IMG/VR virus record: IMGVR_UViG_3300042566_001780
Coordinates: 62,001 to 126,000 of that record
Length of the DNA stretch: 64,000 bases
Direction: 5' to 3' (one strand)
The position numbers were made by a program, and so were the translations under genes. The notes under the pieces are model-generated. The model saw only the letters and a program-made list of their open reading frames with translations. It ran no database searches and was not told where the DNA came from. Numbering within the stretch: the stretch's first letter is position 1; each line of letters begins with the position of its first letter. Shown here piece by piece: positions 6,201-39,295 of the stretch.

Positions 6201-6452
6201 CAAATAAATAAGCAATCATCAGAACAGGGCACAACTAACTCTACCACAAGTAATACAGAAACAACTTCACTTGCATCACCTGATGTTGTTGGCATTCTTC
6301 AATCTATGTTGGCTGTATTACAACAAAATCTAATGACTGATCAAGAGCAGTTAAAGTTGACTGGACAATTGATTGGGCAATCTAGAGTAAAAGCAGATTT
6401 TAGCTCTTCCGCTATGATGGCAGACAGAATTTTAGGACCACGGTCCGTTTGA
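3261..6452 (+). CDS. tail tape measure protein
   Basis: 1063 aa, Ala/Gly/Ser-rich helical, amphipathic central repeats, next to baseplate hub genes. Confidence 0.7.
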   Translation: MDAEILKTLQNIEKLLKNTTSLSANKTLPPARGNDRSEQKENRSIQREFKASAASLKGFKDSIYGLITGVSGLKSEVSKATSAFGAFGSQFAKFMSSLESVEVKSAQPVTLNLTSLDKAVLKLIDTNLSIEKTLATSTSLLQKMSDCVCERVDARPEQNQDESTWSAISNKVLGKFFSKETQKPAENTVKATKAVKEENEKLAKSTNGFNTNLTFTGSMLHGLGQQFDKLKQVIVTVTSDFFKIAGVGMGSTESLMTLYKNALLAGMSLEEYMSILKDNTAVTRSSSLADFNKTISSADKQLAELGVFGNEARALQASLADSNTRMGVSQNKLTSAAADQISMFEKLRKATNMSAAEFGTLVRSVAENDQAQRELVGLHPAERQARQQQLLSVMSLGKQMGLTTAQSEKLGAAMMAARGEGASTRYESAGRLRQMGAIVGMGGEAQRLAQLTLKGASRSTQEEAEYQSVLASLDKRIQSERLMAQQTGNLGYEYQLDELEKTIKGSGAGQIMDASRAATLAQESGRAGANADFGKSVGVFEQAVAQFATIINGFFKSPLAGLSAAIGGAVAFAFKGPLMRMLGGAFTGGPGGGAVSGAAKVAADAATQAKNLFYSFGYQAGRVTALISNSASKTFSFLKGGALSAFDTIRKTYNALSLSSAITSPLEVVKNLFAGAGNSIFNFVSKPFTAIKNLMSSMQFGNIASLIKTPIETIKGLFGSIPSKLSSIIPSLKGMATSISGFAQAIPGMSAIGNAFSGLLPAIKKLPLIGGLITAGMEIFTGEMTAALNPSGGIMNTIFGVATAFLTAIPNLIIDSMAFVFGDDLIQPLRNIFDGVVAGINQTFKELLGGIAGGIAGLLKYILPKDSKLIKFLEGAQSALNESAAETAATTKKLVSDKNATLSKISEENKAKAAEANKEGKKAVDQATATAKQFNNVMYGLPAASTIVSDAKTLVGTQQQAAKPIQATPEVQKPTQVAPEQINKQSSEQGTTNSTTSNTETTSLASPDVVGILQSMLAVLQQNLMTDQEQLKLTGQLIGQSRVKADFSSSAMMADRILGPRSV

Positions 6453-6478: not shown

Positions 6479-8161
6479 GTGAGTAATTATGCTGGTATGT
6501 GGCGTATTGTAACGCCAAAAACGCGAAAGCAATTTTACACTACATTGTCTACTGACGCATATGATCCGCGAGCTACAGATTTGAGCTCAATGTCGTCGCT
6601 AACATGGTATTCTCAAGTGATGCGCGGGCCTGGTTCGCGGGTTCAATCATACAAGCAATATGACGTAATGGACGCAGACATTGATATTGCTCGTTCACTT
6701 GACATTATTGCTGAAGAAATTGCTACTCGTGATGAGAAGACTAATTTGCCATTTGTGATTGAATGGCAAAAAGAAGACAATCAAGACATTACTGATTCTA
6801 CTATTGTTACTGTTCGCGCTGCGCTGCGACAGTTTTCGCAGCTTCAAGATTTGAAGAAGCGAATGTTCAACATTGCAAGAACTATGGTCAAATATGGCGA
6901 TTGTTTCTTTAGAAAAACCTCTGATACAAAGCGCTGGCAATATATTGATCCATCTTTGGTATATGGTATTGAGATTGACGAAAACGGAGCTGCTATTGCA
7001 TATCATATTCGGCGTCCGGCTTCTGCAAATAATGCGCCTTATGGCTCAATCAAGAATGAATTCTTAGATATTGTGCCTGCATCAGCCATTATTCACTTCA
7101 CCATGTCTGATGACATGGGTGACTCTGCGCCGTTTGGACAAAGCATTTTACGGCCCATATATCGAGTATACCGCCAATTGGCTATGCTTGAAGATGCAAT
7201 GATCATTTATCGAATTGTCCGTGCTCCAGAAAGACGAGTATTCTACATTGACGTTGGTAATATGAACCAGCATCAGGTAAAGAGGTACTTGGAACAAGTT
7301 AAAAATGAAATGCGCCAGAAAAAAGTTCCAGGTACTGGAATTAATGGTGGCCGTGATACTGTTGATGGGCAGTACGATCCGCAGTCTATGCAAGACGATA
7401 TTTTCATGGCGGTTACAGCTAATGGCAGAGGATCTCGTGTTGAAACTCTTCCAGGTGGTACTGAAGATTTTGGCACTAACTTGCTTCGTCAATTCCAAGA
7501 AAAAATCTTCCGTGGTCTTCGTATTCCAACTTCTTATCTAGGCGGTACTGATGCGGCGGGTGCCCAAACCAATGATGGTAAAGTAGGTATTGCCTATATT
7601 GAAGAACTTCGTTTTGCTAATTTCATTTCTCGCTTGCAACAACGAATCAATGATGTTTTTGATGCAGAATTCAAAATCTATTTGAAAGTAACAGGTCTTC
7701 GAGTAGATGATGAAGTATTTGACATTCGCTTACCTGACCCAGCAAACTTTGCACTATATCGCCAGGCAGCGCTTGATGCGGATCTAATTAACTCATTCTC
7801 TAACATTCAAGAAGTCAAATTCTTATCTCGTCGGTTTATCCTTAAGCGTTATTTGGGTCTTTCTGATGACGAAATTCAAATGAATGAAACAATGATTAAG
7901 GAAGAGCGAGCAATTGAAGATACTGATGATACTTCTGCAATGCAGCAAATTTATGATCCAGCAGTATTTGATAATCGCGAGCCAATTTCGATCGTAAAGC
8001 CAGATGAATCTCTAAATTCATCAAACACTGATAGCTTTAACTCGCCAGAAGATGAAATGGGAATGTCTGGCGAAGAACCAGCACCAGAAGAGACTCCTAT
8101 GGCTGGTGAACTAGATGATACTGGTATTGAAGATAAACCGCCTGCTATTCCTATAGCTTAA
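6479..8161 (+). CDS. portal vertex protein, T4 gp20-like
   Basis: LEDAMIIYRIVRAPERRVFYIDVGNM, VETLPGG, EELRF; acidic tail. Confidence 0.95.
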   Translation: MSNYAGMWRIVTPKTRKQFYTTLSTDAYDPRATDLSSMSSLTWYSQVMRGPGSRVQSYKQYDVMDADIDIARSLDIIAEEIATRDEKTNLPFVIEWQKEDNQDITDSTIVTVRAALRQFSQLQDLKKRMFNIARTMVKYGDCFFRKTSDTKRWQYIDPSLVYGIEIDENGAAIAYHIRRPASANNAPYGSIKNEFLDIVPASAIIHFTMSDDMGDSAPFGQSILRPIYRVYRQLAMLEDAMIIYRIVRAPERRVFYIDVGNMNQHQVKRYLEQVKNEMRQKKVPGTGINGGRDTVDGQYDPQSMQDDIFMAVTANGRGSRVETLPGGTEDFGTNLLRQFQEKIFRGLRIPTSYLGGTDAAGAQTNDGKVGIAYIEELRFANFISRLQQRINDVFDAEFKIYLKVTGLRVDDEVFDIRLPDPANFALYRQAALDADLINSFSNIQEVKFLSRRFILKRYLGLSDDEIQMNETMIKEERAIEDTDDTSAMQQIYDPAVFDNREPISIVKPDESLNSSNTDSFNSPEDEMGMSGEEPAPEETPMAGELDDTGIEDKPPAIPIA

Positions 8162-19426: not shown

Positions 19427-19746
19427 AATGGGATGTCGTCGTCCCATTCTGGAGGCAATGCCTTAGGCTCTGGTCCAACATAAGACGGATCATAGAAATT
19501 GTTAATGACGTCTTGATAATGCCCACGAAGACGTCGTTGATCATCTAAAAGAATGTTGATCTTTCCAATACACGAAAAATCGCCATCTGGCGGACCATAT
19601 ACAGTAATGCGACCATCACTGTACTTTCCATCCCAACAACCATTCACTACCCAAAAATCAAATTCCAATTTGCCATCATCAGTGAAATGCATTCCTTTGC
19701 ACTCTACCAATAATGATGGCTCATCATACCCCAAAATCAATCTCAT
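19423..19746 (-). CDS. hypothetical protein
   Basis: FWVVNGCWDG motif, DDDIPF C-terminus. Confidence 0.6.
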   Translation of the reverse strand: MRLILGYDEPSLLVECKGMHFTDDGKLEFDFWVVNGCWDGKYSDGRITVYGPPDGDFSCIGKINILLDDQRRLRGHYQDVINNFYDPSYVGPEPKALPPEWDDDIPF

Positions 19747-19997
19747 TGGTCAATCCCAAAATGTTGCTTGATGAGCTCTGCGCTACTCACTGAACCATTG
19801 TTGAAATGATCTGCGCCAGAAAATTGGTTCTTCATACAAATGTCAACACATTTTTGAATTAACAACTTTGAGTAGATCTCAAGTTCACGTGTATAGTCAC
19901 AAGACCAATCAATTGGAGTCCAAGGATCTTCATCTGGTTCAAATCGAACAAATCCTGCTTCTTGAGCAAGATCTTTCAAAACAGTTTTCATTTTCAC
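19743..19997 (-). CDS. three-helix paralog family member (outlier copy)
   Basis: LKDLA..YSKLLIQKC..IKQHFGID. Confidence 0.65.
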   Translation of the reverse strand: MKMKTVLKDLAQEAGFVRFEPDEDPWTPIDWSCDYTRELEIYSKLLIQKCVDICMKNQFSGADHFNNGSVSSAELIKQHFGIDQ

Positions 19998-28225: not shown

Positions 28226-28638
28226 AAAAAGATGTGTTAGAATTTGCAGAAGCTGCGGGAATTCGATACAACCACAAAACTGCGGCAAAGATCACAAAGT
28301 TTGCTCAGCTGATTTTAGCTGAGCTGATCAAAGAGATCAATGCACAACCCAATCCGCAAAATCTCAATTACAAACCTTCTGAGACCTATGCGTATTTGGT
28401 CCAAAATCATTTTGATCTTGAGATCAACGAATTCACTGGTGTAAAATTCTCGAAAGTTTCAAAGAACACTGATGTGATGACTTTGAAGGAATTTGAAGAA
28501 GCTTGCGAAATGATCATGTTCACTCAGGATGACGGTGATGGTTATTTCATGAAATCCGAAACTGAAGAATCAAACATTAGCGTGTGGGGTTATGAAACTC
28601 CATCTTGGGATACCCATGTAGCTTGGTACAACAAGTAA
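28222..28638 (+). CDS. three-helix paralog family domain fused to C-terminal FTxDDGDGY..VAWYNK domain
   Basis: KFAQLILAE..QNHFDLE followed by a second module. Confidence 0.55.
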   Translation: MKKDVLEFAEAAGIRYNHKTAAKITKFAQLILAELIKEINAQPNPQNLNYKPSETYAYLVQNHFDLEINEFTGVKFSKVSKNTDVMTLKEFEEACEMIMFTQDDGDGYFMKSETEESNISVWGYETPSWDTHVAWYNK

Positions 28639-28643
28639 TTATT

Positions 28644-29780
28644 ATGTCAAATTTCCTCTTTGATTTCTTTGCTGAGTTCATCAAAGGTCCTATCTGGAAA
28701 CAGATGGAAGAAACCGTTGAAAACAGCCCGTGGCATCGTGAAGCAAACGTTGCTACTCATACTTTGATGGTGGTTTCGTATTTCAATGACCACTTTGCTC
28801 ACAAGTACACTGCAAAGCAACAAATGATTGCCATGTTGGCTCTCCTGTTTCATGATACTGGGAAGCCTGAAGCAGAAGAAGAGCTGGAAAAAGCTGATGG
28901 TTCTGGAAAATATCGCCGGTATGCTGGTCATGAGCTCGAGTCTGCTCACGTTTTCATGGAACAATATTTGGCCTCTTCATTGAAGGATCACTTGTCTGTC
29001 GAAGAAGCTCGTGCTATTCGTTGGATCATTGAGCATCATTTGCCCTATGGTTACAAAAACAAGCAGAAGCTTCAAGATCTGAAGAAGGCAACTATGTCGG
29101 CTCTTCATGCAGCAGATTGCCCAATGGGATTGTTCTATGATTGTCTGCGTGCTGATGCTCATGGCCGCATTAGCGATAACCATGAAGAGAAGCTGCAGAA
29201 CGTGGAAACTTGGATTTATTCTTTTCATGCTGTCACTTTTGAAGTTGGTGCAAAACGTCAGTATTCTGGAAAGATGTACATTTTGGTGGGCCCGTCGGGA
29301 TCAGGCAAGAGCACTTTTACTCAAGAGCTTTCGAAGAATCATGACGTTAGCGTCATCAATGATGATCAGATGAAGATGGATTTGTTCAGGAGCATCTTCG
29401 CTAATGACGCGCGATCTGATTTTGACATCTATGATGATGCATGGCAATATTGCACGATGGACCACAAACCAGAATATACGTTTTATCGCAACAAACAAAT
29501 CAGTGACATTGCATCAAATACTGCTAAAAACGGATCCGTTGTAGTTTGTGATATGGTCAATTCTTCTAAGAAACGCCGTGCGCAAATGGTAGATGTTGCC
29601 AAATGCCACGATCTGGATGTTGAGGTAGTTGAGTTTTGGGTTCCGCTTGATACCCTGCTTGCTCGACAGCAATCTCGGAGTGACAAGAGAGTCCCGGTTG
29701 ATTCCATCAAGAAACAATATAGCGCCATTCAACTTGCATGGTTGGGTGTCGAGTGCAACTCCGTAAAGGTGATTTCATGA
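28644..29780 (+). CDS. HD phosphohydrolase plus P-loop polynucleotide kinase (HD-Pnk-like)
   Basis: WHRE..HT, LFHDTGK, GHE, EHH; GPSGSGKS; RSDKRVP. Confidence 0.75.
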   Translation: MSNFLFDFFAEFIKGPIWKQMEETVENSPWHREANVATHTLMVVSYFNDHFAHKYTAKQQMIAMLALLFHDTGKPEAEEELEKADGSGKYRRYAGHELESAHVFMEQYLASSLKDHLSVEEARAIRWIIEHHLPYGYKNKQKLQDLKKATMSALHAADCPMGLFYDCLRADAHGRISDNHEEKLQNVETWIYSFHAVTFEVGAKRQYSGKMYILVGPSGSGKSTFTQELSKNHDVSVINDDQMKMDLFRSIFANDARSDFDIYDDAWQYCTMDHKPEYTFYRNKQISDIASNTAKNGSVVVCDMVNSSKKRRAQMVDVAKCHDLDVEVVEFWVPLDTLLARQQSRSDKRVPVDSIKKQYSAIQLAWLGVECNSVKVIS

Positions 29781-30051: not shown

Positions 30052-30243
30052 ATGATTGCTCAAACTTCTGGAATTCGCAAAGGCTATTTGGTGAAAGCCG
30101 AAGACATCAAGCATGAAGGTCGACTTTCTACTGAAGATATTCAGGACATTGACCACAAATTGGTGTTTGAATGGGTGAAGACTGGTCAGTGGAAACGCCA
30201 TGACTTTGAAAAGTGGCTGAAGGCAATTCGCGTCATTGAATAA
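30052..30243 (+). CDS. hypothetical protein
   Basis: VFEWVKTGQW motif; follows the early promoter at 30010. Confidence 0.55.
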   Translation: MIAQTSGIRKGYLVKAEDIKHEGRLSTEDIQDIDHKLVFEWVKTGQWKRHDFEKWLKAIRVIE

Positions 30244-30553
30244 GGAAACAAAAATGAGTGCTCTTCCTAAGTGGGATCCTATTTTTCTTCAAGAAGAATT
30301 TGGTGATGATGTTGTATCAAAGTTGGCATTTTTGTCTGGTTGCAATCGTCACTCTCTAGGTAATTCTAGCGTGAATGGTTGGATCATTGATGATGAGACT
30401 CTTCGCCAGTTTGCAGTTGCAATTGTGGATGAATGTCGAGAAGTTTTGAAGAAAGAAATGCAACGGCTTGATGAAATTCCTGGTCGTGAAATCAGCGCAC
30501 AGTCTTTTGAAACCGCGCATCTGTTGATCAAAAAACATTTCAATCAACCATGA
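30236..30553 (+). CDS. three-helix paralog family member
   Basis: QFAVAIVDEC..IKKHFN. Confidence 0.65.
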   Translation: MNKETKMSALPKWDPIFLQEEFGDDVVSKLAFLSGCNRHSLGNSSVNGWIIDDETLRQFAVAIVDECREVLKKEMQRLDEIPGREISAQSFETAHLLIKKHFNQP

Positions 30554-30756
30554 CTCTTGAACTGAATAAAATCAAGCGATCGATGCATGCAGATGTCATC
30601 GCATCTTTTTGGATGATGCTGCGTGAACTTGAAGAAAAAGCTGATTATGGCAGCCAACTTGACAAAGTTCAAGTTGAAGGTTGGTATAGGCAATGGAATC
30701 GAATGACTGGCGATGACAAAGTGCCACGTTGGAAACAGGTGAAAAATGATGAATGA
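30550..30756 (+). CDS. hypothetical protein
   Basis: Coupled ORF. Confidence 0.55.
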   Translation: MTLELNKIKRSMHADVIASFWMMLRELEEKADYGSQLDKVQVEGWYRQWNRMTGDDKVPRWKQVKNDE

Positions 30757-30988
30757 ACGAATCAAAGAGCTTGCTATGCAAGCAGACCCAGAATATACTG
30801 GTGATGAAGATGACAACATGGGTCATGCTTTGGTAGGAAATGCCGCTATTCAAAGATTTGCCGAGTTGATTGTGAAGGAATGTGCTATGCTTATTGGGGG
30901 TTTTGAAATTACCCAAGAAGTTGCCCTTGACGAATATGTTGATTATGAAGCAAGTGCGGTATTGAAAGAGCATTTCGGAGTTGAATGA
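30746..30988 (+). CDS. three-helix paralog family member
   Basis: MNERIKELA..RFAELIVKEC..LKEHFGVE. Confidence 0.75.
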   Translation: MMNERIKELAMQADPEYTGDEDDNMGHALVGNAAIQRFAELIVKECAMLIGGFEITQEVALDEYVDYEASAVLKEHFGVE

Positions 30989-31150
30989 TGAAAGTTAACA
31001 CCGCAGTACGTCGTATTGAAAATGCTATCAATTGCGGGGACTACAAAGAAGCAGATGCTATGCTAAAACGTTATTGCCGTAAATTTGGTAATCGTAAGTT
31101 CACTTATTGGCTTAGAACGTTTATTACAAATGGACTTTGGGAAATGAATT

Positions 31151-31402
31151 ATGAATGAACGAATCAAAGAACTTTTGCCCAACCCATTTGCTGTAGATTA
31201 TCAAGCTAGAGAAACGCCGCTTGATTTGTACACTGAAGTAGAAATGCAAAAATTTGCTTCTCGAATCATTGAAGAATGTGCAGCTATTATGCGAGCGCGT
31301 CTCTTCCCGGATTATGAGGGAAATTCACATAAAGTAGCACACAACAATGCACTGCTATGCGCAATCAGCGACTTGAATGAATTGATGGAGAATGAAGAAT
31401 GA
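31151..31402 (+). CDS. three-helix paralog family member
   Basis: MNERIKELL..KFASRIIEEC. Confidence 0.7.
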   Translation: MNERIKELLPNPFAVDYQARETPLDLYTEVEMQKFASRIIEECAAIMRARLFPDYEGNSHKVAHNNALLCAISDLNELMENEE

Positions 31403-31574
31403 ATACAGTTGTTTGGATTATGCTACTAGCCACTCATGGCTATAAGATGTCTGCAGGACCTGAATTTTCCACAAAAGAAAAGTGCGAGAAGGCTGCAGTC
31501 GTTATGGTTAATGCATTCGATGCAACACGACTCATCGGTAAATCTGAGATGCCACTTTGCGTGAAGATCGAAAA

Positions 31575-31808
31575 ATGAATGAACAACACATCAAGCAACT
31601 TGTCGGTCAAGCTAAATTCATGACTGAGGAAGCGCTCAACTGCAAATTATCATTCAATTCTGATCTGAAGACATTTAGTGAATTTTTTGCTGACTTGATT
31701 ATTCGCGAATGCGCAGATGTAGTTGCAGACATTAACCAAGACTATGATGGTGGGTCCACGACAGTCAATGCTGCAGAAGAAATCAAACAACATTTTGGAA
31801 TTGAATGA
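31575..31808 (+). CDS. three-helix paralog family member
   Basis: MNEQHIKQL..FADLIIREC..IKQHFGIE. Confidence 0.7.
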   Translation: MNEQHIKQLVGQAKFMTEEALNCKLSFNSDLKTFSEFFADLIIRECADVVADINQDYDGGSTTVNAAEEIKQHFGIE

Positions 31809-32029
31809 TGAATATCCGCATTCAGGAAATCAAAAATCGAGCTTCAGTGTGGTGTGATGAGAACATTCCTGAACAGTTTTCTGAAGAAACCAATGGTTAT
31901 GGAGCGGCTTGGGAAAACAAGTTTGCAGAGTTGATTATTAATGTGTGTGCTATATTGGGCGACTTTGCAGAAAATGGCGACGTTTTGAAACCTAGTGTGA
32001 TGATCAAAGATTATTTTGGAGTAGAATGA
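31805..32029 (+). CDS. three-helix paralog family member
   Basis: MNIRIQEI..KFAELIINVC..IKDYFGVE. Confidence 0.7.
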   Translation: MMNIRIQEIKNRASVWCDENIPEQFSEETNGYGAAWENKFAELIINVCAILGDFAENGDVLKPSVMIKDYFGVE

Positions 32030-32072
32030 TGCATGAACGAATTCAAGCGTTGATTAAGGATGCCACTAGAAT
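31997..32072 (+). repeat. 76-bp direct repeat, copy 1 (gene junction)
   Basis: 74/76 identical to 37146-37221 by manual alignment. Confidence 0.85.
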
Positions 32073-32277
32073 AATCCCTGCTGATTGGAATTGCGTAGAA
32101 GATCTTGAAGAATTTGACAAAGAAAAATTTGCTAAGTTAATTATACAGGAATGTCTGAAAATAACAGGTAGTCTTTCTATGCTACATTCTAGAAAAGATG
32201 TGGCATTTGATGTAGGCTACACAATGGGATGCGAGCGAGCAACTAAAGAAATCAAAAAACATTTTGGAGTAGAATGA
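32026..32277 (+). CDS. three-helix paralog family member
   Basis: MHERIQAL..KFAKLIIQEC..IKKHFGVE. Confidence 0.7.
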   Translation: MMHERIQALIKDATRIIPADWNCVEDLEEFDKEKFAKLIIQECLKITGSLSMLHSRKDVAFDVGYTMGCERATKEIKKHFGVE

Positions 32278-32278
32278 A

Positions 32279-32539
32279 ATGCAATACCTTTTGACACAGG
32301 AAGAGTATGATGCTCTGCATACCCACAAAGAGGAACACACTGCTCTTGAGAAAAAGAAACTACAAAAACTCTGCACCAAGATTGCAAATGAAATGCCAGT
32401 AGCATGGGGTTGGGGTGGCCCTGATCCTAAGCCATGGGGATGCTATTTGACAGCCAGAGACAATGATGAAGAATGGTATTGCGATAAGTGCCCTGTTCAG
32501 GAAATTTGTCCGTCTGATGAGAGAGCTTACTCACAATGA
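32279..32539 (+). CDS. Cys-rich hypothetical protein
   Basis: MQYLLTQEEY..WGC..YCDKCPV..CP. Confidence 0.6.
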   Translation: MQYLLTQEEYDALHTHKEEHTALEKKKLQKLCTKIANEMPVAWGWGGPDPKPWGCYLTARDNDEEWYCDKCPVQEICPSDERAYSQ

Positions 32540-32781
32540 ATGAAAAATTGAAAGATCTTGCATTCAGGGCAGGATTTGTTGGTGAAAGCATGTTTCCCAT
32601 TCTTGGCACATGTCAGGAAACTGCTTTGCAAAATTTTGCCAATTTGATTGTTGAAGAATGTTGCCAAGCTGCAAAGACGAAGCTATTGCCTAATTTGAGA
32701 GTTCATGAGACTCATCAAATGTCTTACAATGAAGGCATTCATTCTACTATCTTGGCCATCAATTCAAATTTCAAGAAGTGA
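32536..32781 (+). CDS. three-helix paralog family member
   Basis: MNEKLKDLA..NFANLIVEEC. Confidence 0.7.
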   Translation: MNEKLKDLAFRAGFVGESMFPILGTCQETALQNFANLIVEECCQAAKTKLLPNLRVHETHQMSYNEGIHSTILAINSNFKK

Positions 32782-33011
32782 ATATGCTAAGCCCAAAACT
32801 AAATGAGCTTCATTCTGCAGCATGGCTTGAAATTTCCAAGGGTCTCAATAATTGTGAACTGCAGTCTCATGAATTTGAAAGTGCAGTCAACGCTAAGTTT
32901 GCAAAGCTAATCATTGAAGAGTGCATCAAGTTTTTGCCTGAAGATTGTCAAGACCCGAAAACAAAAATTCATCTAAGCTATGTTCTTTTGAACCATTTTG
33001 AGGTAGAATAA
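32778..33011 (+). CDS. three-helix paralog family member
   Basis: KFAKLIIEEC..LNHFEVE. Confidence 0.7.
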   Translation: MNMLSPKLNELHSAAWLEISKGLNNCELQSHEFESAVNAKFAKLIIEECIKFLPEDCQDPKTKIHLSYVLLNHFEVE

Positions 33012-33249
33012 TGTCATTAGCAGAGAAATGGAAAAGTTTTGTTAAACGTCATCTTGATGCTATGATGGAAGCAGCTCAGGCAGATTCAGAAATTTCTTAT
33101 GCCGAATGGCAAGAGCTCAAAACTGAGTACAAGAAAACACTAGGTGAAGACTATGAACGAGGACAAAAAGTTCCAAAATCGCAGGTACGATGATTTCCAT
33201 AATCATGGTGGTTGGAAGAAGCGATTCAATCGATGGCTGAAAAAGTTCT

Positions 33250-33513
33250 TTGGTGAATGAAATGAAAAGCTACGAGGAAATGATTCAGTGGCACGTTGAT
33301 CAAGCAGACAACGGGAAGATTCGCCACTATGAATGGCCATCGTACTTTGCTATTTCGGAAGTTTTTGGAAAAGATGTCAACTCAGTTGTCGCTGACATTA
33401 ATGGTGAAAAGGCGCGGCGTGAAGAGATCAAAAAGCAGCAACGAAAAGAACAGCATCGTGTTGAAAATGAAAAACGCCGTCTAGCTAATTTACAGAAAGC
33501 TCAAAATGTCTAA
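33250..33513 (+). CDS. hypothetical protein
   Basis: ORF in early operon; start probably ATG near 33262. Confidence 0.5.
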   Translation: MVNEMKSYEEMIQWHVDQADNGKIRHYEWPSYFAISEVFGKDVNSVVADINGEKARREEIKKQQRKEQHRVENEKRRLANLQKAQNV

Positions 33514-33757
33514 AAGAATCTTGGAAATTGCTGAACGCGCTGGCATTCATTTTAGTAATAAGAGGATTCTTAATGGTGGCAATGAAATTGCTCAGTTTGT
33601 TACAAAATCTAGTGTGGAGTATTTTGCTGAGCTAGTTGCCCAAGAATGTGCTAGAGTTATTGAAGAGCACGCAAAACTGTTTCCTGAGGCAGATACAACT
33701 TGGCGTTGTGCTATGATAGAATCTGCCAAAGTCGTAAAAGATAATTTTCGGAGTTGA
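33506..33757 (+). CDS. three-helix paralog family member
   Basis: MSKRILEIA..YFAELVAQEC..VKDNF. Confidence 0.7.
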   Translation: MSKRILEIAERAGIHFSNKRILNGGNEIAQFVTKSSVEYFAELVAQECARVIEEHAKLFPEADTTWRCAMIESAKVVKDNFRS

Positions 33758-33760
33758 AGA

Positions 33761-33988
33761 ATGAATCCAGATGCTATCAAAAGATTTCGGTTCGCTGCTG
33801 CTGATCATGCAAATGAATTGAAACCTCTAGGTATTATGAAGTGGAATGAAGTTCGTGATGAAAAATTTGCTGAGTTGATCATTGAAGAAAATTCATCTAA
33901 AATGGTGGCAGCTTTGATGAGTGATCCTAATTTTGCAAAAGCTATGGATGCTTATTACGAAATCAAATGGGCACATCGTTTCGATTGA
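33761..33988 (+). CDS. three-helix paralog family member (divergent C-terminus)
   Basis: EKFAELIIEE. Confidence 0.6.
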   Translation: MNPDAIKRFRFAAADHANELKPLGIMKWNEVRDEKFAELIIEENSSKMVAALMSDPNFAKAMDAYYEIKWAHRFD

Positions 33989-33995
33989 ATAGATT

Positions 33996-34268
33996 ATGAA
34001 TAGCATCACAAAACGTCTAATGTCAGCGGCAGGTGCAGGATTTTATGACAAATGGCATCAAGGTAAGCACACAATAGAATTTACTACTGAAAAATTTGAT
34101 CCTGAAAAATTTGCCGAACTGATTGTACAAGAATGTATTTGCCTTGTGCTAAATGGGAAGCATGATAATGAAAAGTTTGACATTAATGACAAATTTCATT
34201 GTGGACACAACATTGCCCTGGAAAACGCTTCCGAAGGAATAGCAAAGCATTTCGGAGTTGAAAAATGA
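33996..34268 (+). CDS. three-helix paralog family member
   Basis: FDPEKFAELIVQEC..IAKHFGVE. Confidence 0.7.
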   Translation: MNSITKRLMSAAGAGFYDKWHQGKHTIEFTTEKFDPEKFAELIVQECICLVLNGKHDNEKFDINDKFHCGHNIALENASEGIAKHFGVEK

Positions 34269-34585
34269 TCTCAGCAAAAGAAGCTAAAGAACTCTATGAA
34301 AAGAGCAGCGCCCGCGTCAAAGTGTTTCTAGACAAAGAAGTTGAACCAAAAGTCAAAGAAGCTATTGATCTAGGCAAGAATTCCTGCACAATCTATCTTG
34401 GTGCAGAGCCGGTATTCAAGATTATTGCACCATCGGTTTTTCACCAACATGTGATGGAACAATTGCGCATTCTAGGCTACAAGGTTCAGTTTGGCCGTTA
34501 TGGTGAAACGTATGTGCCTCGAGGTCTGGGTGATGGGGTTTGCAGAGACGAGTACTGCAACTACGGCATTATGATTAGTTGGTGA
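34265..34585 (+). CDS. hypothetical protein
   Basis: MISAKEA..LGYKV..ISW architecture. Confidence 0.6.
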   Translation: MISAKEAKELYEKSSARVKVFLDKEVEPKVKEAIDLGKNSCTIYLGAEPVFKIIAPSVFHQHVMEQLRILGYKVQFGRYGETYVPRGLGDGVCRDEYCNYGIMISW

Positions 34586-34599
34586 TCTAAGGAAATGAA

Positions 34600-34872
34600 A
34601 TGACAATTGGATTCAGGAATCTTGTTCTTGGTGATGAAAGCACTACACCAGTGTCAGTCACAAAGTTGTTGAATGATGATCAGCAACTACAAAATTACGT
34701 GACAGCAATCAGGACAGAACTTGCTCGAGTAGAAGCCCAAAAGAAAATGCTGTCTGAGCTGCTTGAAGAGCAAATGGCAAAATGTCAGCACCTCGTTTTC
34801 AGGGACGTTGATGCTGGCATGTATGCATTTCGAAAATGCGTAATTTGCGGTTTTGACATGGGAAGCGTATGA
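34600..34872 (+). CDS. hypothetical protein with C-terminal CxH/CxxC
   Basis: ORF with AAGGA RBS. Confidence 0.55.
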   Translation: MTIGFRNLVLGDESTTPVSVTKLLNDDQQLQNYVTAIRTELARVEAQKKMLSELLEEQMAKCQHLVFRDVDAGMYAFRKCVICGFDMGSV

Positions 34873-35135
34873 TTGCTAAGATGGATGAGCTGGCCTTGAA
34901 AGCTGGTGCTTCATTCATTGGTGGGCACATTGAATTTCCGCCCGGATCAGGAGATTGGGTTTGGTACGAGTACAAGCACATCGACTATAATGACATGTGC
35001 CACCGCGAATTCATGAAGCTAATTGTTGAAGAATGCTTCAAGGCTGCTATGATTGAATCAAAAGGTCACATAAACCCGGTTGATCTAATGAATAGAATGA
35101 AAGAAATGACGGGGCTCAGTCAAAATGACATCTAA
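34869..35135 (+). CDS. three-helix paralog family member
   Basis: MDELALKAG..EFMKLIVEEC. Confidence 0.6.
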   Translation: MIAKMDELALKAGASFIGGHIEFPPGSGDWVWYEYKHIDYNDMCHREFMKLIVEECFKAAMIESKGHINPVDLMNRMKEMTGLSQNDI

Positions 35136-35928
35136 CAAAGACATTATCAATCAACTCCAAGACTGCATTCGTGATCTACTTGAGTTTGTAGAATCGCACA
35201 GTCATCATTGGAATGGCGTAGTTGCGCAGCATCCGCAAATTTTGGCAGAAGTTGCACATCCGCTATTGGAATTGAATGCAGCTGACATGAAGATGCCGGT
35301 GAAGACTCCAACACCTCCAGCAATGGCGGAAATGAGCGATATCATTTTTGCTGAAGGATGGAATGCATGCGTTGAGGCATTCTTCGATGGTGTTGAATCA
35401 GATCCGCCAACAATTATCACCGTAACTGAGACACTTGGAAAAGAGCCAGTTGGGTGGCAAGTTTGGTCTGGCGTGATGGATATGCGCCCACATTGGCCGC
35501 CCTTTCAAACTAAACCAGAAGCTGAAGCTCTTGCTGAGCGTATCAAAAGTAATACAGAAGTTCGTCCTGTGTATGCTGGTGAAATGAAACAATCACCAAA
35601 GCAGTACTTCTATAAGAATAACGAATGCACTGCACAATCCGCAAAAGATCCTGGCTGCAAATGTTGGTGGGACATTGGCACAGGTCCATTAAAAGATGGG
35701 ACTCCTACTGATTTTCGTGAAAAGCCAAAGGTGTCACAATGTGAACTTCCTCCCGCTGGTTGGATTTGCACTAGACAAGCAGGACATGATGGCCCCTGTG
35801 CAGCCCATAATGCTGAATCTATCATTGAGCTTCAAACTCAACTAGAAAATTTGAAAAAGGTCGTTGATGTCAAAATGAATGAGATTAGAAATGTCATTAT
35901 GTCTACCTTGACTAAGGATTTGAAATGA
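35125..35928 (+). CDS. mosaic hypothetical protein (Ead/Eaa-like modules)
   Basis: GWNAC, EPVGW..RPVY, PPAGWICTR..HDGPCAA modules. Confidence 0.5.
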   Translation: MTSNKDIINQLQDCIRDLLEFVESHSHHWNGVVAQHPQILAEVAHPLLELNAADMKMPVKTPTPPAMAEMSDIIFAEGWNACVEAFFDGVESDPPTIITVTETLGKEPVGWQVWSGVMDMRPHWPPFQTKPEAEALAERIKSNTEVRPVYAGEMKQSPKQYFYKNNECTAQSAKDPGCKCWWDIGTGPLKDGTPTDFREKPKVSQCELPPAGWICTRQAGHDGPCAAHNAESIIELQTQLENLKKVVDVKMNEIRNVIMSTLTKDLK

Positions 35929-36275
35929 TGAAGTGCTTTAGCATCGATGATGAGAACTTCAACTATGATTCTCTCGGTGATTTAATAATGTCAACTAGTC
36001 CTGAAGTGGGCGATTTCTACTATGAAGCAGATTGTGTTGATGTGATTGTTGACAATTATCTGGTGAATCATTTGCTTGAAGATGCCGATGATTTGCTATA
36101 TGACGATCTCGGTGAAATCTATGATAGTGATTTTTCAAAGGTGTCTGATGAAGCCAAGAAAGAATTGCTAATTTTGCTGCAAACCTGGGCAGCAAAGCAC
36201 GTCAACTTGGATCGCTATTGGAAAATTGTTGGGGAAAGCAGGAAGCTGCAATTCACCAAAGAAGATCTTGAATGA
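35925..36275 (+). CDS. acidic hypothetical protein
   Basis: Coupled ORF. Confidence 0.55.
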   Translation: MMKCFSIDDENFNYDSLGDLIMSTSPEVGDFYYEADCVDVIVDNYLVNHLLEDADDLLYDDLGEIYDSDFSKVSDEAKKELLILLQTWAAKHVNLDRYWKIVGESRKLQFTKEDLE

Positions 36276-36285
36276 AGGATTGAAA

Positions 36286-36948
36286 ATGTTTGAAGAAGAA
36301 TGGGACGCGGCTGATTGGGTCAAATTGCTTAAGCTAGCTGCAAATGGAAAAACCACTTTGTCAAAAGACCAGCTCAAAGAAGTAGCTGCGTTTCTTTTTC
36401 AACAAGCTACAGAAATTGTGAAATTGAAAAGTAAGTTGGAAGAGGAGGGTGAGATTGTTATCACTACTAGTTTTGAAACTGGCAAGTGTCTTGCTGTCAC
36501 ACGCCAAGATGAAGAAGGTCGAATCCTAAGAATTGTTTGGGAAGCACCTGATGTTGTTGAACAGGATGAGCCGAGCGTAGAAGAAGCTCTTCGTGTTTTG
36601 CATAGTGTAGAGACCTCAGTGCAAAGTGGAATCAATGTCACCGATGGTTGGAGAATTTTGCGAAATCTCATTAGCAAGTTCAAAATTGTCCCTCACGGTG
36701 TGCAAAAAGCTATTGAGAATGCGGGATTCACTTTGGTGAAAAACCAGTTTGGTTATCATCTCATGAAACTTGGCAAAATTGAGGCACATTCTGTTCAAGA
36801 TGAAGAATCTCAACCAGTAGCTTGGAGACTTCGTGATGAAGAGCCTGGAATGAAACCTCGATGGGTCTACTATGATGAGGACGATTTTGTAAAAGGCGTC
36901 ATTCCACATGAGGTTTTTCCAAAGCTTCAAAAGCTCTACACAAAATGA
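36286..36948 (+). CDS. mosaic hypothetical protein
   Basis: AVTRQDEEGRILRIVW and QPVAW modules; start uncertain. Confidence 0.5.
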   Translation: MFEEEWDAADWVKLLKLAANGKTTLSKDQLKEVAAFLFQQATEIVKLKSKLEEEGEIVITTSFETGKCLAVTRQDEEGRILRIVWEAPDVVEQDEPSVEEALRVLHSVETSVQSGINVTDGWRILRNLISKFKIVPHGVQKAIENAGFTLVKNQFGYHLMKLGKIEAHSVQDEESQPVAWRLRDEEPGMKPRWVYYDEDDFVKGVIPHEVFPKLQKLYTK

Positions 36949-37178
36949 AACTAACTGCACAACAGAAGTTTGACCTACTTCCAAAAATTCAACTCAAGGG
37001 CGAAAAAAAGCCTACTACTCAAGTTTGGTTGACCCAAAAAGATGCACTCAACTATGCAGATCAAATTGAATCTGCTGCTAGTGAACATTTTCAAAAACGT
37101 ATCGATCAATTGGAAGAAATCATTGAAGAGCAACGCAGAGCTCTAGTGATGATCAAAGATTATTTTGGAGTAGAATGA
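36945..37178 (+). CDS. hypothetical protein ending in the family C-terminus MIKDYFGVE
   Basis: Unrelated body with repeat-derived end. Confidence 0.55.
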   Translation: MKLTAQQKFDLLPKIQLKGEKKPTTQVWLTQKDALNYADQIESAASEHFQKRIDQLEEIIEEQRRALVMIKDYFGVE

Positions 37179-37221
37179 TGCATGAACGAATTCAAGCATT
37201 GATTGAGGATGCCACTAGAAT
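37146..37221 (+). repeat. 76-bp direct repeat, copy 2
   Basis: 74/76 identical to 31997-32072. Confidence 0.85.
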
Positions 37222-37375
37222 GAACCGAATTTTGAAAAATGGTCTTATTACGGCCTACATCATTTTTATGTCACTTGCTTTTCTTGGAAAAACTGGTGAC
37301 TATTTTGTAGCTGGTGTTGCTGCACTATCAATGTTTGCAGTTTGGTCATTTGCTGTCAAAATTAAAACAAAATGA
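37175..37375 (+). CDS. two-TM protein with repeat-derived N-terminus
   Basis: MMHERIQALIEDATR followed by a hydrophobic body. Confidence 0.5.
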   Translation: MMHERIQALIEDATRMNRILKNGLITAYIIFMSLAFLGKTGDYFVAGVAALSMFAVWSFAVKIKTK

Positions 37376-37698
37376 AAACAAAAGATTTTCCATCAGTTGT
37401 AGCTGCAAGAAAAGTTGTAGAAAAACAGGCTGCGCGCTATCATCAAATGATGGGCACTAATCATCAAATGAATGAAGCAACCAAGCAGCTCATCATCAAA
37501 TCCGGTCTTTCCCCAACTGAACAATGTTATGATGCGCATGGTTACTGTTTTGAAGCAACTAACCAAAAGCTGAAAGCACTGGTCGAGAATGTAGTTCGAC
37601 AAGCTATTTGGATTGCTTATCATAGTCATGCAATGAATAAGGATGCCAAATTCACCGAGCATCTGGATGAAGTGAAACGTTACTATGGGATTGAATGA
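37372..37698 (+). CDS. three-helix paralog family member (divergent)
   Basis: MNEATKQL..VKRYYGIE. Confidence 0.55.
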   Translation: MKTKDFPSVVAARKVVEKQAARYHQMMGTNHQMNEATKQLIIKSGLSPTEQCYDAHGYCFEATNQKLKALVENVVRQAIWIAYHSHAMNKDAKFTEHLDEVKRYYGIE

Positions 37699-37842
37699 TG
37701 AAGGGTCCTCGAGAATTGAAGAACTATGTAGCTCGATTTCGCAAAGAGCTCAAGGCAATGCATTGGGATGACCTGCTTATCTTCAAACTGCAACGCTGTA
37801 AGAAATGGTTCAAACGGGACAAACGAATCAAGAAAGAAGACT

Positions 37843-38067
37843 ATGAATGAAATAGTGAAGCAACTTTTGGATGAATCAACCCAAACTATTGAAATTATTG
37901 ATCCTGACACCAAGCTTACGCATCACCGGTCTTTCATTGATCAAGAAGAATTTGTGAAGTTGCTTGTTGAAGAAATCCAGCACCGATGCATGCAAGAATG
38001 GTTTGGCGATTCTCTTGAAGATATTATCTATGATAGATTGCCGAAGCACTTTGGACTAACATCCTAA
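37843..38067 (+). CDS. three-helix paralog family member
   Basis: MNEIVKQLL..EFVKLLVEE..PKHFGL. Confidence 0.6.
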   Translation: MNEIVKQLLDESTQTIEIIDPDTKLTHHRSFIDQEEFVKLLVEEIQHRCMQEWFGDSLEDIIYDRLPKHFGLTS

Positions 38068-38088
38068 TATTTGTAGAATTCACCAGAT

Positions 38089-38118
38089 GAGGCCCAGAGA
38101 TGAAAATTTCTGGGCCTC
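38089..38118 (+). terminator. hairpin/terminator ending the early operon
   Basis: GAGGCCCAGAGA..TTTCTGGGCCTC. Confidence 0.6.
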
Positions 38119-38263
38119 AATTAGTTTCACATCCATCAAAACAAAGCGCCCTCAGAGCCCTCGGCAATCCTAAAACTTTGTTACAAATAGGATGTAAAAA
38201 AGTTACAATAGACTCTTATCGAAATTTGTTGATGAAATTGGAAGAAATCATCACCAGATTTTG

Positions 38264-38320: not shown

Positions 38321-39244
38321 ATGACAACCAAACGTTCCCTTGCTGATCTTGCTGCTGCTTTTTCTTCCAAAGCTAATGAAGGCGGATCCAGCCCCACTTG
38401 GAAGCTTTTCTTCAATTTCTGGAAAGCTCCTGTCGATAGCGTATCCACTGTTCGTTTCTTGCCTGATGCTAATCAAGATAACCCTATGGGTTTCCTTGTT
38501 GAAAATCTAGTGCATGAGCTGACGATCAATGGCAAACGCGAAAAAGTGCCTTGCTTGAAGATGTACGGTGAATCTTGTCCAGTTTGTGAGCTTTCTGCTC
38601 AATACTACGATGAGAAGAATCCGCTGCATTCTGAAGAACTTGGTAAGAAGTTCTATCGTAAAAAGTCTTACATTGGCCAAGTGCTTGTGATTGACACTCC
38701 CGTTGAACATGATGGTGACCAACTTGTCAAGCTAATTGAATTCGGTCCTCAGGTCTTTAAGCAAATCCAAGCTGCATTCCAGTCTGGTGATCTTGAAGAA
38801 GCCCCCTATGAGCTTAAGGGTGGTTACAATTTCCGTTTCCGTAAGACTTTGACTGGCGCAGGTCAGAATTCTTACACCACTTCTAACTTTGCTCCTAAGC
38901 AAACTGACGTAGCAGACGATACGCTGAATGCAATTACACTGTATGATCTTTCTCAGTATCGCACTCCGAAAATGGATCGCACTGCTTTGGAAGCTATGCT
39001 CGTAGCTGCTCAGACCGGTGAAAGCTATACTGCAGAATCCGATGCTCCTGCTAAGACTGCAGACACAGTGAACAAGCTTCGCGATCGTCTTGCACAATCG
39101 GCCGATGCTGATGATGCTCCTGCGGCAGAAACTCCTAAGGCATCTGCTCCTGAAGAGTCGTCTGGTGGCAACAAGCAATCTGTGGTGGAAATGCTTCGCG
39201 CACGTGCTGCAGCTGCTAAGGCTGCACAGCAAGCTGCTCAGTAA
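38321..39244 (+). CDS. single-stranded DNA-binding protein, T4 gp32-like
   Basis: VRFLPD, H..C..CPVC zinc site, GYNFRFRK, Y..SNF. Confidence 0.9.
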   Translation: MTTKRSLADLAAAFSSKANEGGSSPTWKLFFNFWKAPVDSVSTVRFLPDANQDNPMGFLVENLVHELTINGKREKVPCLKMYGESCPVCELSAQYYDEKNPLHSEELGKKFYRKKSYIGQVLVIDTPVEHDGDQLVKLIEFGPQVFKQIQAAFQSGDLEEAPYELKGGYNFRFRKTLTGAGQNSYTTSNFAPKQTDVADDTLNAITLYDLSQYRTPKMDRTALEAMLVAAQTGESYTAESDAPAKTADTVNKLRDRLAQSADADDAPAAETPKASAPEESSGGNKQSVVEMLRARAAAAKAAQQAAQ

Positions 39245-39257
39245 TTTTTACTAGCAC

Positions 39258-39295
39258 GAGGCCCATCTTGTTTACTCGAGATGGGCCTTATTTTT
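39258..39295 (+). terminator. intrinsic terminator
   Basis: GAGGCCCATCTTG..CGAGATGGGCCTT then ATTTTT. Confidence 0.75.

What the first reader, a model, noticed from the sequence alone, without database searches (positions are those of the whole stretch)
30971..37700. The conserved FGVE C-terminus doubles as the Shine-Dalgarno and start cassette of the next gene
The family's ends are TTYGGAGTWGAATGATG-like strings (30974, 31794, 32015, 32263, 34251, 37164, 37684), placing GGA(G) just upstream of an overlapping or adjacent ATG. The HFEVE variant (32993) supplies GAGG instead. At 33747-33758 the same TTCGGAGTTGAA is kept but read in another frame (FRS*). This suggests selection on the nucleotides: a portable stop/RBS/start junction that lets any downstream gene be translationally coupled.
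Basis: partly seen in the sequence, partly recalled or inferred. Interest (0 to 1): 0.6.

Follow-up and report, generated by a model that had tools for sequence, protein, structure and literature searches.

The report
Reused ribosome-site and gene-swap junction
In a lake-water jumbo phage and many relatives, the last few codons of a small, highly variable gene family (…HFGVE(E)-stop) are the same short DNA string that places a ribosome-binding site exactly 7 bases before the next gene's start, and related phages swap genes at that string.

Summary
All nine listed ends exist as described, and the string is far above chance: 10 window matches against 2 expected, and 247 against about 4 in 1.05 Mb of related loci.

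The window lies in a 292-kb metagenomic jumbo-phage record. It holds 16 copies of an unnamed ~80-aa family with three conserved blocks: head MNERIKEL, middle FAELIxEC, tail HFGVE(E).

Findings in 271 non-redundant members from 81 sources:
- **Codon choice:** tail Gly is GGA in 94% (background 24%).
- **Spacing:** 194 of 212 junctions put an ATG exactly 7 nt after GGAG, wherever the stop falls.
- **Downstream genes:** 127 of 177 are not recognised as family members.
- **Other genes with the tail:** 44 cassette occurrences end ORFs with no family match.
- **Uncoupled copies:** these lose the motif.

It is incomplete. The head and middle blocks also have frozen synonymous codons. Half-genes reassort at the middle block, and near-identical genes carry unrelated neighbours with breakpoints at the cassette. 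Recombination therefore contributes to the nucleotide conservation too.

Translational coupling itself is untested. I rate this a new variant of known kinds: translational coupling and PeSL-like shuffling cassettes.

The parts
30236..30553 (+). Family copy with a diverged tail (KKHFNQP*). Its stop overlaps the next ATG (ATGA) and there is no GGAG.
30749..30988 (+). Family copy ending HFGVE*. The cassette is 30974-30990: GGAG at 30977-30980, a 7-nt spacer, ATG at 30988, stop TGA at 30986-30988. The next gene is not a family member.
31151..31402 (+). Family copy whose tail has decayed to MENEE* (ATG GAA AAT GAA GAA TGA). The ATGA overlap is kept and the SD is weakened to GGAA.
31575..31808 (+). 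Family copy ending HFGIE*. The cassette is 31794-31810 (GGAA, 7 nt, ATG at 31808). The next gene is a family copy.
31808..32029 (+). Family copy ending YFGVE*. The cassette is 32015-32031 (GGAG, 7 nt, ATG at 32029). It lies inside the 81-nt repeat 31997-32077.
32029..32277 (+). Family copy ending HFGVE*. The cassette is 32263-32281 (GGAG, 9 nt, ATG at 32279). The next gene is not a family member.
32536..32781 (+). Family copy with a decayed tail (SNFKK*) and no GGAG.
32778..33011 (+). Family copy ending HFEVE*. GAGG at 33000-03 takes the place of GGAG, followed by a 7-nt spacer and ATG at 33011, which overlaps the TAA stop.
33506..33757 (+). Family copy with one extra T in a T-run, so it reads DNFRS*. 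The cassette 33747-33763 is intact (GGAG, 7 nt, ATG at 33761). Without the extra T the frame reads FGVEE* with an ATGA overlap.
33761..33988 (+). Family copy with a diverged tail (…AYYEIKWAHRFD*). It is uncoupled.
33996..34268 (+). Family copy ending HFGVEK*. The cassette is 34251-34267 (GGAG, 7 nt, ATG at 34265 overlapping the TGA stop). The next gene is not a family member.
34869..35135 (+). Diverged family copy (…MTGLSQNDI*). Its Gly codon is GGG.
36945..37178 (+). An ORF with only a marginal family match that carries the family tail (…MIKDYFGVE*). The cassette is 37164-37180. The stretch 37146-37226 is a 95% copy of 31997-32077, and the flanks are unrelated.
37178..37375 (+). Chimeric ORF. 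The family head (MHERIQALIEDATR) is joined to a hydrophobic, membrane-like body.
37372..37698 (+). Longer family copy ending RYYGIE*. The cassette is 37684-37700 (GGGA, 7 nt, ATG at 37698).
37843..38067 (+). Last copy of the array, ending HFGLTS* (TTT GGA CTA…, 4-mer GGAC). No gene follows. A 14-bp hairpin at 38088-38119 comes next.
19743..19997 (-). The 16th family copy, outside the array. It ends HFGIDQ* with GGGA, 7 nt, then ATGA.

Best explanation
The string CAT TTY GGA GTN GAA (GAA) TGA, with an ATG overlapping the stop, is a reused junction cassette with two linked roles.

**Role 1: expression.** In a tightly packed, one-directional array of small genes, the cassette supplies three things: the upstream gene's last residues and stop, a Shine-Dalgarno core (GGAG) exactly 7 nt before the ATG, and the ATG of whatever gene follows. 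The downstream cistron is then translated by ribosomes that terminate or load there. The sequence anatomy is shown. The coupling itself is inferred.

**Role 2: recombination boundary.** The cassette is one of three nucleotide-conserved blocks of the family (head ATG AAC GAA CGA ATT…, middle AAG TTC GCC GAG TTG ATT…GAA TGT, and the tail). Homologous recombination between paralogs and between phages crosses over at these blocks. This reshuffles half-genes at the middle block and whole genes at the tail or head. It also leaves the tail on unrelated ORFs. The mosaics are shown. The mechanism is inferred.

**Origin of the conservation.** His-Phe, and perhaps Gly as a helix cap, are held at the protein level. 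The GGAG, the fixed spacing and the ATG are held at the nucleotide level. Recombination both exploits and homogenises the identity.
For: **Anatomy.** GGAG followed by 7 nt and ATG occurs at 194 of 212 Gly-tail junctions. Six more have GTG at 7 nt and only 12 have other spacers. The start stays fixed relative to GGAG while the stop moves, giving FGVE*, FGVEE*, FGVEK*, FGVEL* and FGVES*.

**Genome norm.** Upstream of 298 long-ORF ATGs in this phage, GGAG occurs almost only at spacers of 4-9 nt, with the mode at 7.

**Codons.** GGA is used in 94% of cases against a 24% background, with p about 1e-110. The neighbouring Phe codon is free. GGA is still 93-94% where middle-block codons have drifted and Phe TTC has fallen from 74% to 28%.

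**Loss when uncoupled.** An SD-like 4-mer is present in 206 of 222 coupled copies and 9 of 21 uncoupled copies (p = 7e-8). G-[VI]-[EK] is present in 186 of 222 against 7 of 21. The window's last copy, which sits before a hairpin, reads GGAC.

**Portability.**
- The cassette core occurs 247 times against about 4.4 expected. 193 occurrences close family ORFs in frame.
- 44 occurrences close ORFs with no family match, including membrane peptides, Cys-rich peptides and GIY-YIG-looking proteins. Some of these share only GVEE, that is, only the stretch from SD to start.
- 127 of 177 downstream genes are not recognised as family members.

**Recombination.**
- 27 pairs are at least 90% identical upstream of the cassette and under 50% identical downstream. 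11 pairs show the reverse. The breakpoints lie in CATTTCGGAGTTGAAGAATGAA.
- Identical V1 segments (between head and middle blocks) are joined to 5-6 unrelated V2 segments (between middle block and tail), and the reverse also occurs.
- The mosaic proteins checked (8) are each seen on 1-18 contigs, seven of them on 3 or more.
- The window holds an 81-nt junction duplicate with unrelated flanks.

**Structure.** The AlphaFold model (pLDDT 78) ends its last helix at Phe79, so G-V-E lies beyond it. No stable RNA structure masks the site, with z-scores from -0.9 to +0.4.
Against: - No expression or translation data exist. No RNA run holds this phage.
- Codon freezing is equally striking in the head and middle blocks, for example R5 CGA 87% against 15%, A40 GCC 75% against 16% and E41 GAG 87% against 25%. 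No SD role exists there, so much of the tail's nucleotide conservation could be recombination or recent spread.
- The direct conditional test was not significant. GGA was 201 of 212 with a nearby start and 10 of 12 without (p = 0.15). Several copies followed by a promoter rather than a gene still keep GGAG.
- Because the ATG is part of the cassette, loss of the motif in uncoupled copies may reflect one rearrangement that removed both.
- Non-family ORFs use the cassette in frame 0 far more often than in the other stop-giving frame (37 against 5). This points to inheritance of a coding tail, or some protein-level value of GVEE.
- Many junctions in the same array have ATGA overlaps with no SD at all.
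- All relatives are metagenome assemblies.
Confidence: 0.7

Rival explanations
1. Recombination or concerted evolution only. The tail, like the head and middle blocks, stays identical at the DNA level because paralogs and phages keep exchanging and converting these blocks, or because the family spread recently. GGAG in front of the next ATG is then a by-product that is used but not selected.
For: Frozen synonymous codons occur in all three blocks. V1/V2 reassort at the middle block. Breakpoints lie at the cassette. GGAG is retained in copies now followed by a promoter. The conditional GGA test gives p = 0.15.
Against: - GGA is the most persistent synonymous site as other sites drift.
- The Gly-to-Glu variant keeps an SD in four cases with an ATG at 7 nt (GAGG).
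- SD-likeness falls from 93% to 43% in uncoupled copies.
- Some non-family ORFs share only the stretch from GGAG to ATG, about 15 nt, which is short for a homologous-recombination tract.
- Spacing is 7 nt in 200 of 212 junctions despite point changes in the spacer.
Confidence: 0.17
2. Protein-level conservation only. HFGVE(E) is a functional C-terminal peptide motif, for example a docking or degradation tag, and the codons follow from common descent.
For: H78, F79, G80, V81 and E82 are 84-97% conserved as residues. Phe is conserved with free codons, so it is protein-level. There is a strong frame-0 preference even on non-family ORFs.
Against: - GGA, GTT and GAA are chosen far above background.
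- G-V-E lies after the last predicted helix.
- The FRS* copy is maintained in three data sets.
- The tail decays when no gene follows.
- Start spacing is invariant.
Confidence: 0.06
3. The conserved GGAG-containing string is mainly a target for an RNA-level regulator, such as a RegB-like endoribonuclease that cuts GGAG in early mRNAs, or a translational repressor site.
For: It is known for phage T4, from my own knowledge, that RegB cleaves GGAG in the SD sites of early genes. The spacer TTGAAGA is more conserved than an SD alone requires.
Against: The 82%-complete record has no REGB_T4 match, although the controls did not ring either. There is no Rfam match and no conserved structure.
Confidence: 0.04
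4. Artefact. The mosaics and repeated junctions are metagenome mis-assemblies at short repeats.
For: Short-k Logan contigs of the source run break exactly at the middle block and at the 81-nt junction.
Against: - The blocks are 20-35 nt, shorter than the reads and the large assembly k-mers.
- Most mosaic proteins recur exactly on several contigs from JGI and ENA (1-18 each).
- Some mosaics occur between paralogs on one contig.
- The window's arrangement is confirmed by contigs from three studies.
Confidence: 0.03

Closest known systems
Translational coupling through overlapping stop and start codons (ATGA, TGATG, TAATG) with the Shine-Dalgarno site inside the upstream gene. Classic cases, from my own knowledge, are E. 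coli trp genes and T4 early genes. A known consequence is a bias in synonymous codons at gene 3' ends.
   Same: The genes are adjacent on one strand. The stop and start overlap by 1 or 4 nt. GGAG lies in the last codons of the upstream gene at the optimal 7-nt spacing. Synonymous choice is bent toward the SD.
   Different: This is not a one-off adaptation of each gene pair. One and the same 15-25-nt string is reused at hundreds of junctions. It sits in front of unrelated genes, at the end of unrelated ORFs and across many phages, and it is visible as a conserved protein tail. Coupling has not been measured here.
PeSL (promoter-early stem-loop) mobile regulatory cassettes of T4-type phages (PMC2839356; PMC4122927)
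   Same: Short conserved expression signals lie at gene boundaries in variable regions of T4-related phages. They mark the breakpoints of gene replacements and give a ready-made expression signal to whatever ORF follows.
   Different: PeSLs are intergenic and transcriptional, combining a sigma-70 promoter with a terminator hairpin. This cassette is inside coding sequence and translational (SD, stop and start). It has no hairpin, and promoter-like matches in the region are near chance level.
Multigene families with conserved framework blocks and variable cassettes that are reassorted by gene conversion. Examples, from my own knowledge, are pilin pilE/pilS and vls-type systems.
   Same: Nucleotide-identical framework blocks separate unrelated variable segments, and the same segment is found in many combinations.
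   Different: This is a phage gene array, with exchange seen between genomes as well as between paralogs. No expression locus with silent donor copies is evident. The function of the proteins is unknown.

Membership tests
Translationally coupled overlapping gene pair | Adjacent genes on the same strand whose stop and start overlap or abut | tested here: met
   ATGA, TGATG or TAATG overlaps occur at the window junctions. In relatives, 226 of 267 tails (before de-duplication) end in TGA, and in the commonest form (GAA GAA TGA) the ATG overlaps the stop.
Translationally coupled overlapping gene pair | SD-like sequence inside the upstream ORF, 5-10 nt before the downstream start | tested here: met
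   GGAG followed by 7 nt and ATG occurs in 194 of 212 junctions. This matches the genome-wide mode.
Translationally coupled overlapping gene pair | Downstream translation depends on translation of the upstream gene | not testable with these tools
   No RNA or ribosome data exist for this phage. No masking RNA structure is predicted.
PeSL mobile regulatory cassette (T4-type phages) | Contains a sigma-70-type early promoter | tested here: not met
   The region has 31 promoter-like matches against 21.8 ± 4.6 in shuffles. Two 9-of-12 matches, the weakest grade listed, touch cassettes. Promoters seen in relatives lie after the cassette, not within it.
PeSL mobile regulatory cassette (T4-type phages) | Contains a conserved stem-loop | tested here: not met
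   Junction folds are no better than shuffles, with z from -0.9 to +0.4.
PeSL mobile regulatory cassette (T4-type phages) | Sits at the breakpoints of gene insertions or replacements between related genomes | tested here: met
   38 pairs are identical on one side of the cassette only. The window holds an 81-nt junction duplicate.
Unnamed ~80-aa phage family (head MNERIKEL, middle FAELIxEC, tail HFGVE) | Three conserved blocks in order, recognised by a profile built from the window copies | tested here: met
   There are 16 copies in the genome, 310 in 81 sources, and more than 6,600 database proteins. No Pfam or PHROG family matches, apart from weak sub-threshold hits.
RegB-type GGAG cleavage system | Phage encodes a RegB endoribonuclease | tested here: inconclusive
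   PF10715 finds nothing in the 82%-complete record. The control genomes did not ring either.

The most novel reading that the evidence does not exclude
The head, middle and tail nucleotide blocks form a built-in combinatorial system. The family is a library of two-module small proteins that phages keep re-dealing by recombination at fixed adaptor sequences. The tail adaptor is also a universal plug: it gives any captured ORF, such as a membrane peptide, a nuclease or a Zn-finger peptide, a ready-made stop, RBS and start inside a polycistronic array. This would be a translational, in-frame counterpart of PeSLs and of Botstein's long-postulated module linkers, spread over thousands of genes in environmental jumbo phages.
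Probability: 0.35. Interest if true: 0.75.

Novelty: new variant of a known kind. Interest (0 to 1): 0.55.

Why it matters
Three reasons.

1. **Linker sequences.** It gives a concrete, countable example of an old idea: that phage gene modules are exchanged at short conserved linker sequences. Here the linker is inside coding DNA and also acts as the expression signal, so a swapped-in gene is translated at once.

2. **Annotation.** It shows that a conserved protein tail in a viral family can be largely a footprint of nucleotide-level functions. This matters when motifs in viral dark-matter proteins are annotated.

3. **An unnamed family.** It flags a very large, unnamed and highly mosaic family of small phage proteins, with more than 6,600 database members. 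The pattern of frozen frames and unrelated inserts suggests strong diversifying pressure, perhaps in host takeover or counter-defence. That function is untested.

Tried and rejected
- **Nucleotide and protein searches of annotated phage records.** The array found no match by DNA and a family member found none by protein. Only the gp32-like neighbour placed the phage, near Ralstonia phage RsoM2USA at 45% identity.
- **Pfam and PHROGs on ten copies.** Nothing reached a curated cut-off or a convincing E-value.
- **First locus search with the 15-row alignment.** It failed because no stretch was conserved enough. A 5-row alignment worked. It seeded on the middle block, so the tail codons were not selected for.
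- **Fold search.** The PDB gave no match at E ≤ 0.001. The viral library gave only uncharacterised relatives.
- **Direct conditional codon test.** GGA with a nearby start against GGA without one was underpowered, with 12 uncoupled Gly tails and p = 0.15. A broader test anchored on Phe79 was significant, but it is partly confounded because the ATG is part of the cassette.
- **The middle block as a neutral control.** I expected it to be neutral. It is not, because its codons are frozen too. That finding led to the recombination result.
- **RNA explanations.** There is no Rfam family, no structure beyond shuffles and no RegB homolog.
- **Literature.** Searches for the motif strings returned nothing relevant.
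- **Sequencing runs.** None of the runs holding this phage is on record as RNA, so expression could not be examined.
- **Integron-like cassette array.** I considered and dropped this because no structured attC-like repeat is present. I did not search for an integrase.


Full report
**Where the window lies.** The window is bases 62001-126000 of a 291,687-bp IMG/VR virus record that is 82% complete by CheckV. A gp32-type single-strand-binding gene at 38321-39244 (Pfam gp32) is most like that of Ralstonia jumbo phage RsoM2USA, at 45% identity. Near-identical DNA occurs in lake, freshwater and wastewater metagenomes. The finding lies in a block of small plus-strand ORFs with overlapping stops and starts. 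The block runs from about 30.2 to 38.07 kb and ends at a 14-bp hairpin at 38088-38119, just before the gp32-like gene.

**The observation.**
- It is above chance, with 10 matches against 1.98 expected, and none of 100 shuffles reached 10.
- The strings are the 3' ends of a paralogous family of about 80 residues. The family has three conserved blocks: head M-N-E-R-I-K-E-L, middle F-A-E-L-I-x-E-C and tail I-K-x-H-F-G-V-E.
- The genome has 16 copies, 15 in this array and one at 19743-19997 on the minus strand.
- In the ATGATG cases the second ATG aligns with the family's Met1 and lies exactly 7 nt after GGAG.
- The HFEVE copy has GAGG in the same four positions with the same 7-nt spacer.
- The copy at 34251 has the ATG overlapping the stop (ATGA), again at 7 nt. 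The copy at 32263 has a 9-nt spacer.

**The frameshifted copy.** The FRS* reading at 33747 is due to one extra T in a T-run. Without it the frame reads DNFGVEE*, with the stop overlapping the ATG. This is the commonest ending in relatives. Contigs from three runs of three studies carry the extra T without gaps, so it is real. One other, independent frameshift was found among 185 tails.

**The family elsewhere.**
- No Pfam or PHROG family matches convincingly, and the motif strings gave nothing relevant in the literature.
- A profile search finds more than 6,600 unnamed proteins.
- A scan of viral contigs seeded on the middle block gave 80 loci, so it was blind to tail codons.
- An HMM search of all ORFs in these loci plus the genome found 310 members, which reduce to 271 after removing near-duplicates at 85% nucleotide identity or more.
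- Their ends are mostly FGVEE* (128) or FGVE* (27). The typical DNA is TTC GGA GTT GAA GAA TGA, with the next ATG formed by the last A of GAA plus the TG of the stop.

Among the 271 members:

| Tail position | Preferred codon | Observed | Background |
|---|---|---|---|
| Gly80 | GGA | 208 of 221 (94%) | 24% |
| Val81 | GTT | 88% | 39% |
| Glu82 | GAA | 98% | 75% |
| Phe79 | TTC / TTT | 59% / 41% | free |

The control I chose did not behave as a neutral control. The middle block and the head are frozen as well, often on codons that are rare elsewhere:

| Position | Codon | Observed | Background |
|---|---|---|---|
| K38 | AAG | 88% | 40% |
| A40 | GCC | 75% | 16% |
| E41 | GAG | 87% | 25% |
| L42 | TTG | 80% | 25% |
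| N3 | AAC | 86% | 35% |
| R5 | CGA | 87% | 15% |

Codon freezing alone therefore cannot be credited to the ribosome site. I then stratified members by how far their middle-block codons have drifted. GGA stays at 97%, 94% and 93% in the first three strata, while Phe TTC falls from 74% to 28% and the head codons decline. In the most divergent stratum only 5 Gly tails remain, 3 of them GGA. In the window's own, more diverged copies, the middle-block codons vary widely, yet 7 of the 8 coupled copies with a Gly at this position use GGA.

**Evidence that the string works as SD plus start.**
- Of 224 non-redundant Gly tails, 212 have a start 4-10 nt after the 4-mer. 194 are an ATG at exactly 7 nt and 6 are a GTG at 7 nt.
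- The start stays fixed relative to GGAG while the stop moves by a codon (E*, EE*, EK*, EL*, ES*, KE*), and the spacer takes point changes but almost no indels.
- In this genome GGAG upstream of long-ORF ATGs occurs almost only at spacers of 4-9 nt, with the mode at 7.
- One relative with an extended tail (YGLHGDYA*) uses GGT at the old site and recreates CAC GGA GAT…ATG, again with a 7-nt spacer.
- Copies without a start nearby lose the motif. An SD-like 4-mer is present in 206 of 222 coupled copies against 9 of 21 uncoupled copies (p = 7e-8), and G-[VI]-[EK] in 186 of 222 against 7 of 21. The window's last copy, followed by a hairpin, reads TTT GGA CTA ACA TCC TAA. This test is partly confounded, because a rearrangement that removes the cassette removes the ATG too.
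- The narrower test on Gly codons alone is not significant (p = 0.15, 12 uncoupled cases).
- The junctions show no RNA structure beyond shuffles, no Rfam match and no RegB homolog.
- The AlphaFold model built on a 97-sequence alignment (mean pLDDT 78) is helix, hairpin, helix, helix. Its last helix ends at Phe79, so G-V-E is a tail beyond the fold.

**Portability.**
- The HMM does not recognise the gene after the cassette as a family member in 127 of 177 cases, although a few may be diverged members.
- The cassette core (GGAG, T-N-R-A-R-N-N, then ATG or GTG) occurs 247 times in 1.05 Mb against about 4.4 expected. 193 occurrences close family ORFs in frame 0 and 2 close them in frame 2.
- 37 occurrences close ORFs with no family match in frame 0, 5 in the other frame in which the cassette supplies a stop (…RS*), and 2 in the third frame. 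Eight close no ORF of 25 aa or more.
- These non-family ORFs include small membrane peptides, Cys-rich peptides and GIY-YIG-looking proteins. Several share only G-V-E-E, that is, only the stretch from SD to start.
- In the window, 31997-32077 and 37146-37226 are 95% identical over 81 nt. This stretch comprises the last 10 codons, the stop and start, and the first 16 codons, while both flanks are unrelated. One flank ORF matches the family only marginally and the other joins the family head to a hydrophobic body.

**Recombination.**
- The segment between head and middle blocks (V1) and the segment between middle block and tail (V2) reassort freely. For example, the V1 segment TTIEEHKWGVSYDNFNK is joined to five unrelated V2 segments, and the V2 segment …PMLRDM[IV]SRGQA… is joined to six unrelated V1 segments. 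All 32 multi-member V1 clusters and all 32 multi-member V2 clusters have two or more partners.
- Anchoring on the cassette, 27 pairs of genes are at least 90% identical in the 80 nt upstream and under 50% identical downstream. 11 pairs show the reverse, and identity stops or starts inside CATTTCGGAGTTGAAGAATGAA.
- Family genes keep the frozen head block whatever lies upstream. Only 57 of 233 are preceded by the cassette.
- The eight mosaic proteins I checked recur as exact sequences on 1-18 contigs from JGI and ENA, seven of them on 3 or more, which argues against assembly chimeras.
- Short-k contigs do break at these blocks, and other phages' contigs pile up on them.

**Conclusion.** The fuller picture is that the tail is one of three adaptor blocks at which this family, and unrelated genes caught in its arrays, are re-dealt by recombination. 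The tail block is special because it is also the translation-start signal for the next gene. His-Phe is held by the protein. GGAG, the 7-nt spacing and the ATG are held at the nucleotide level. How much of that is selection for translation and how much is homogenisation by recombination remains open, and coupling has not been measured.

The closest known things are ordinary translational coupling and the PeSL cassettes of T4-type phages (PMC2839356, PMC4122927). This differs from coupling by the reuse of one string across unrelated junctions. It differs from PeSLs by being translational, in frame and unstructured.

Noticed in passing
L004, L008, L014, L062, L068 and others (family genes near position 6000 of each locus): The family is a two-module mosaic. 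Identical V1 segments are joined to 5-6 unrelated V2 segments and vice versa, with the crossover in the FAELIVREC block, whose synonymous codons are frozen.
   Followed up: yes
window 38088-38119 and 39258-39289 (+): Two strong hairpins of 13-14 bp, both built on GAGGCCCA…TGGGCCT, flank the gp32-like gene. The first closes the family array. They could be a repeated terminator or regulatory motif.
   Followed up: no
L001 5216-5729; L009, L011, L020, L027, L032, L041, L053; L021 9111-9624: ORFs that look like GIY-YIG or T5orf172 nucleases sit inside relatives' arrays and also end in the cassette (…NTFGVK*, …IEHFGVEE*). Nuclease-made breaks could drive the shuffling. They were not scanned against Pfam.
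   Followed up: no
L080 5997-6354: The cassette's ATG/TGA is mutated (GAAGAATCT), which fuses a family gene in frame to a downstream Cys-rich ORF. This is a gene fusion made by a small change in the junction.
   Followed up: partly
L010 1359-1485, L023 6242-6374, L040 6260-6386, L004 5880-5994 and others: Many 25-45-residue hydrophobic peptides lie between family genes. They often begin MNE… and end …KHFGVE(E)*, so they look like family heads and tails around an unrelated membrane core.
   Followed up: partly
L026 about 6246-6290 and 7177-7220; L080 about 7092-7140; L068 about 6210-6260: Some family genes are followed directly by a good sigma-70-type promoter (TTGACA…TATACT or TATAAT) instead of a coupled gene, yet they still keep GGAG.
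   Followed up: partly
window 28605-29780 (+): A 391-aa protein combines an HD domain and an AAA_33 kinase-type P-loop domain, just upstream of the array.
   Followed up: no
window 30851-31001, 33720-33870, 34173-34323: Contigs from four metagenome runs pile up only on the conserved blocks. Short-k contigs of the likely source run end at 30885 and at 32026 or 32048. The blocks act as repeats at the community level.
   Followed up: partly
window 33506, 36945, 37372, 31399, 31575: Several other junctions in the array have ATGA overlaps preceded by A-rich sequence (CAAAATGA) and no SD. Not all coupling in this array relies on GGAG.
   Followed up: no
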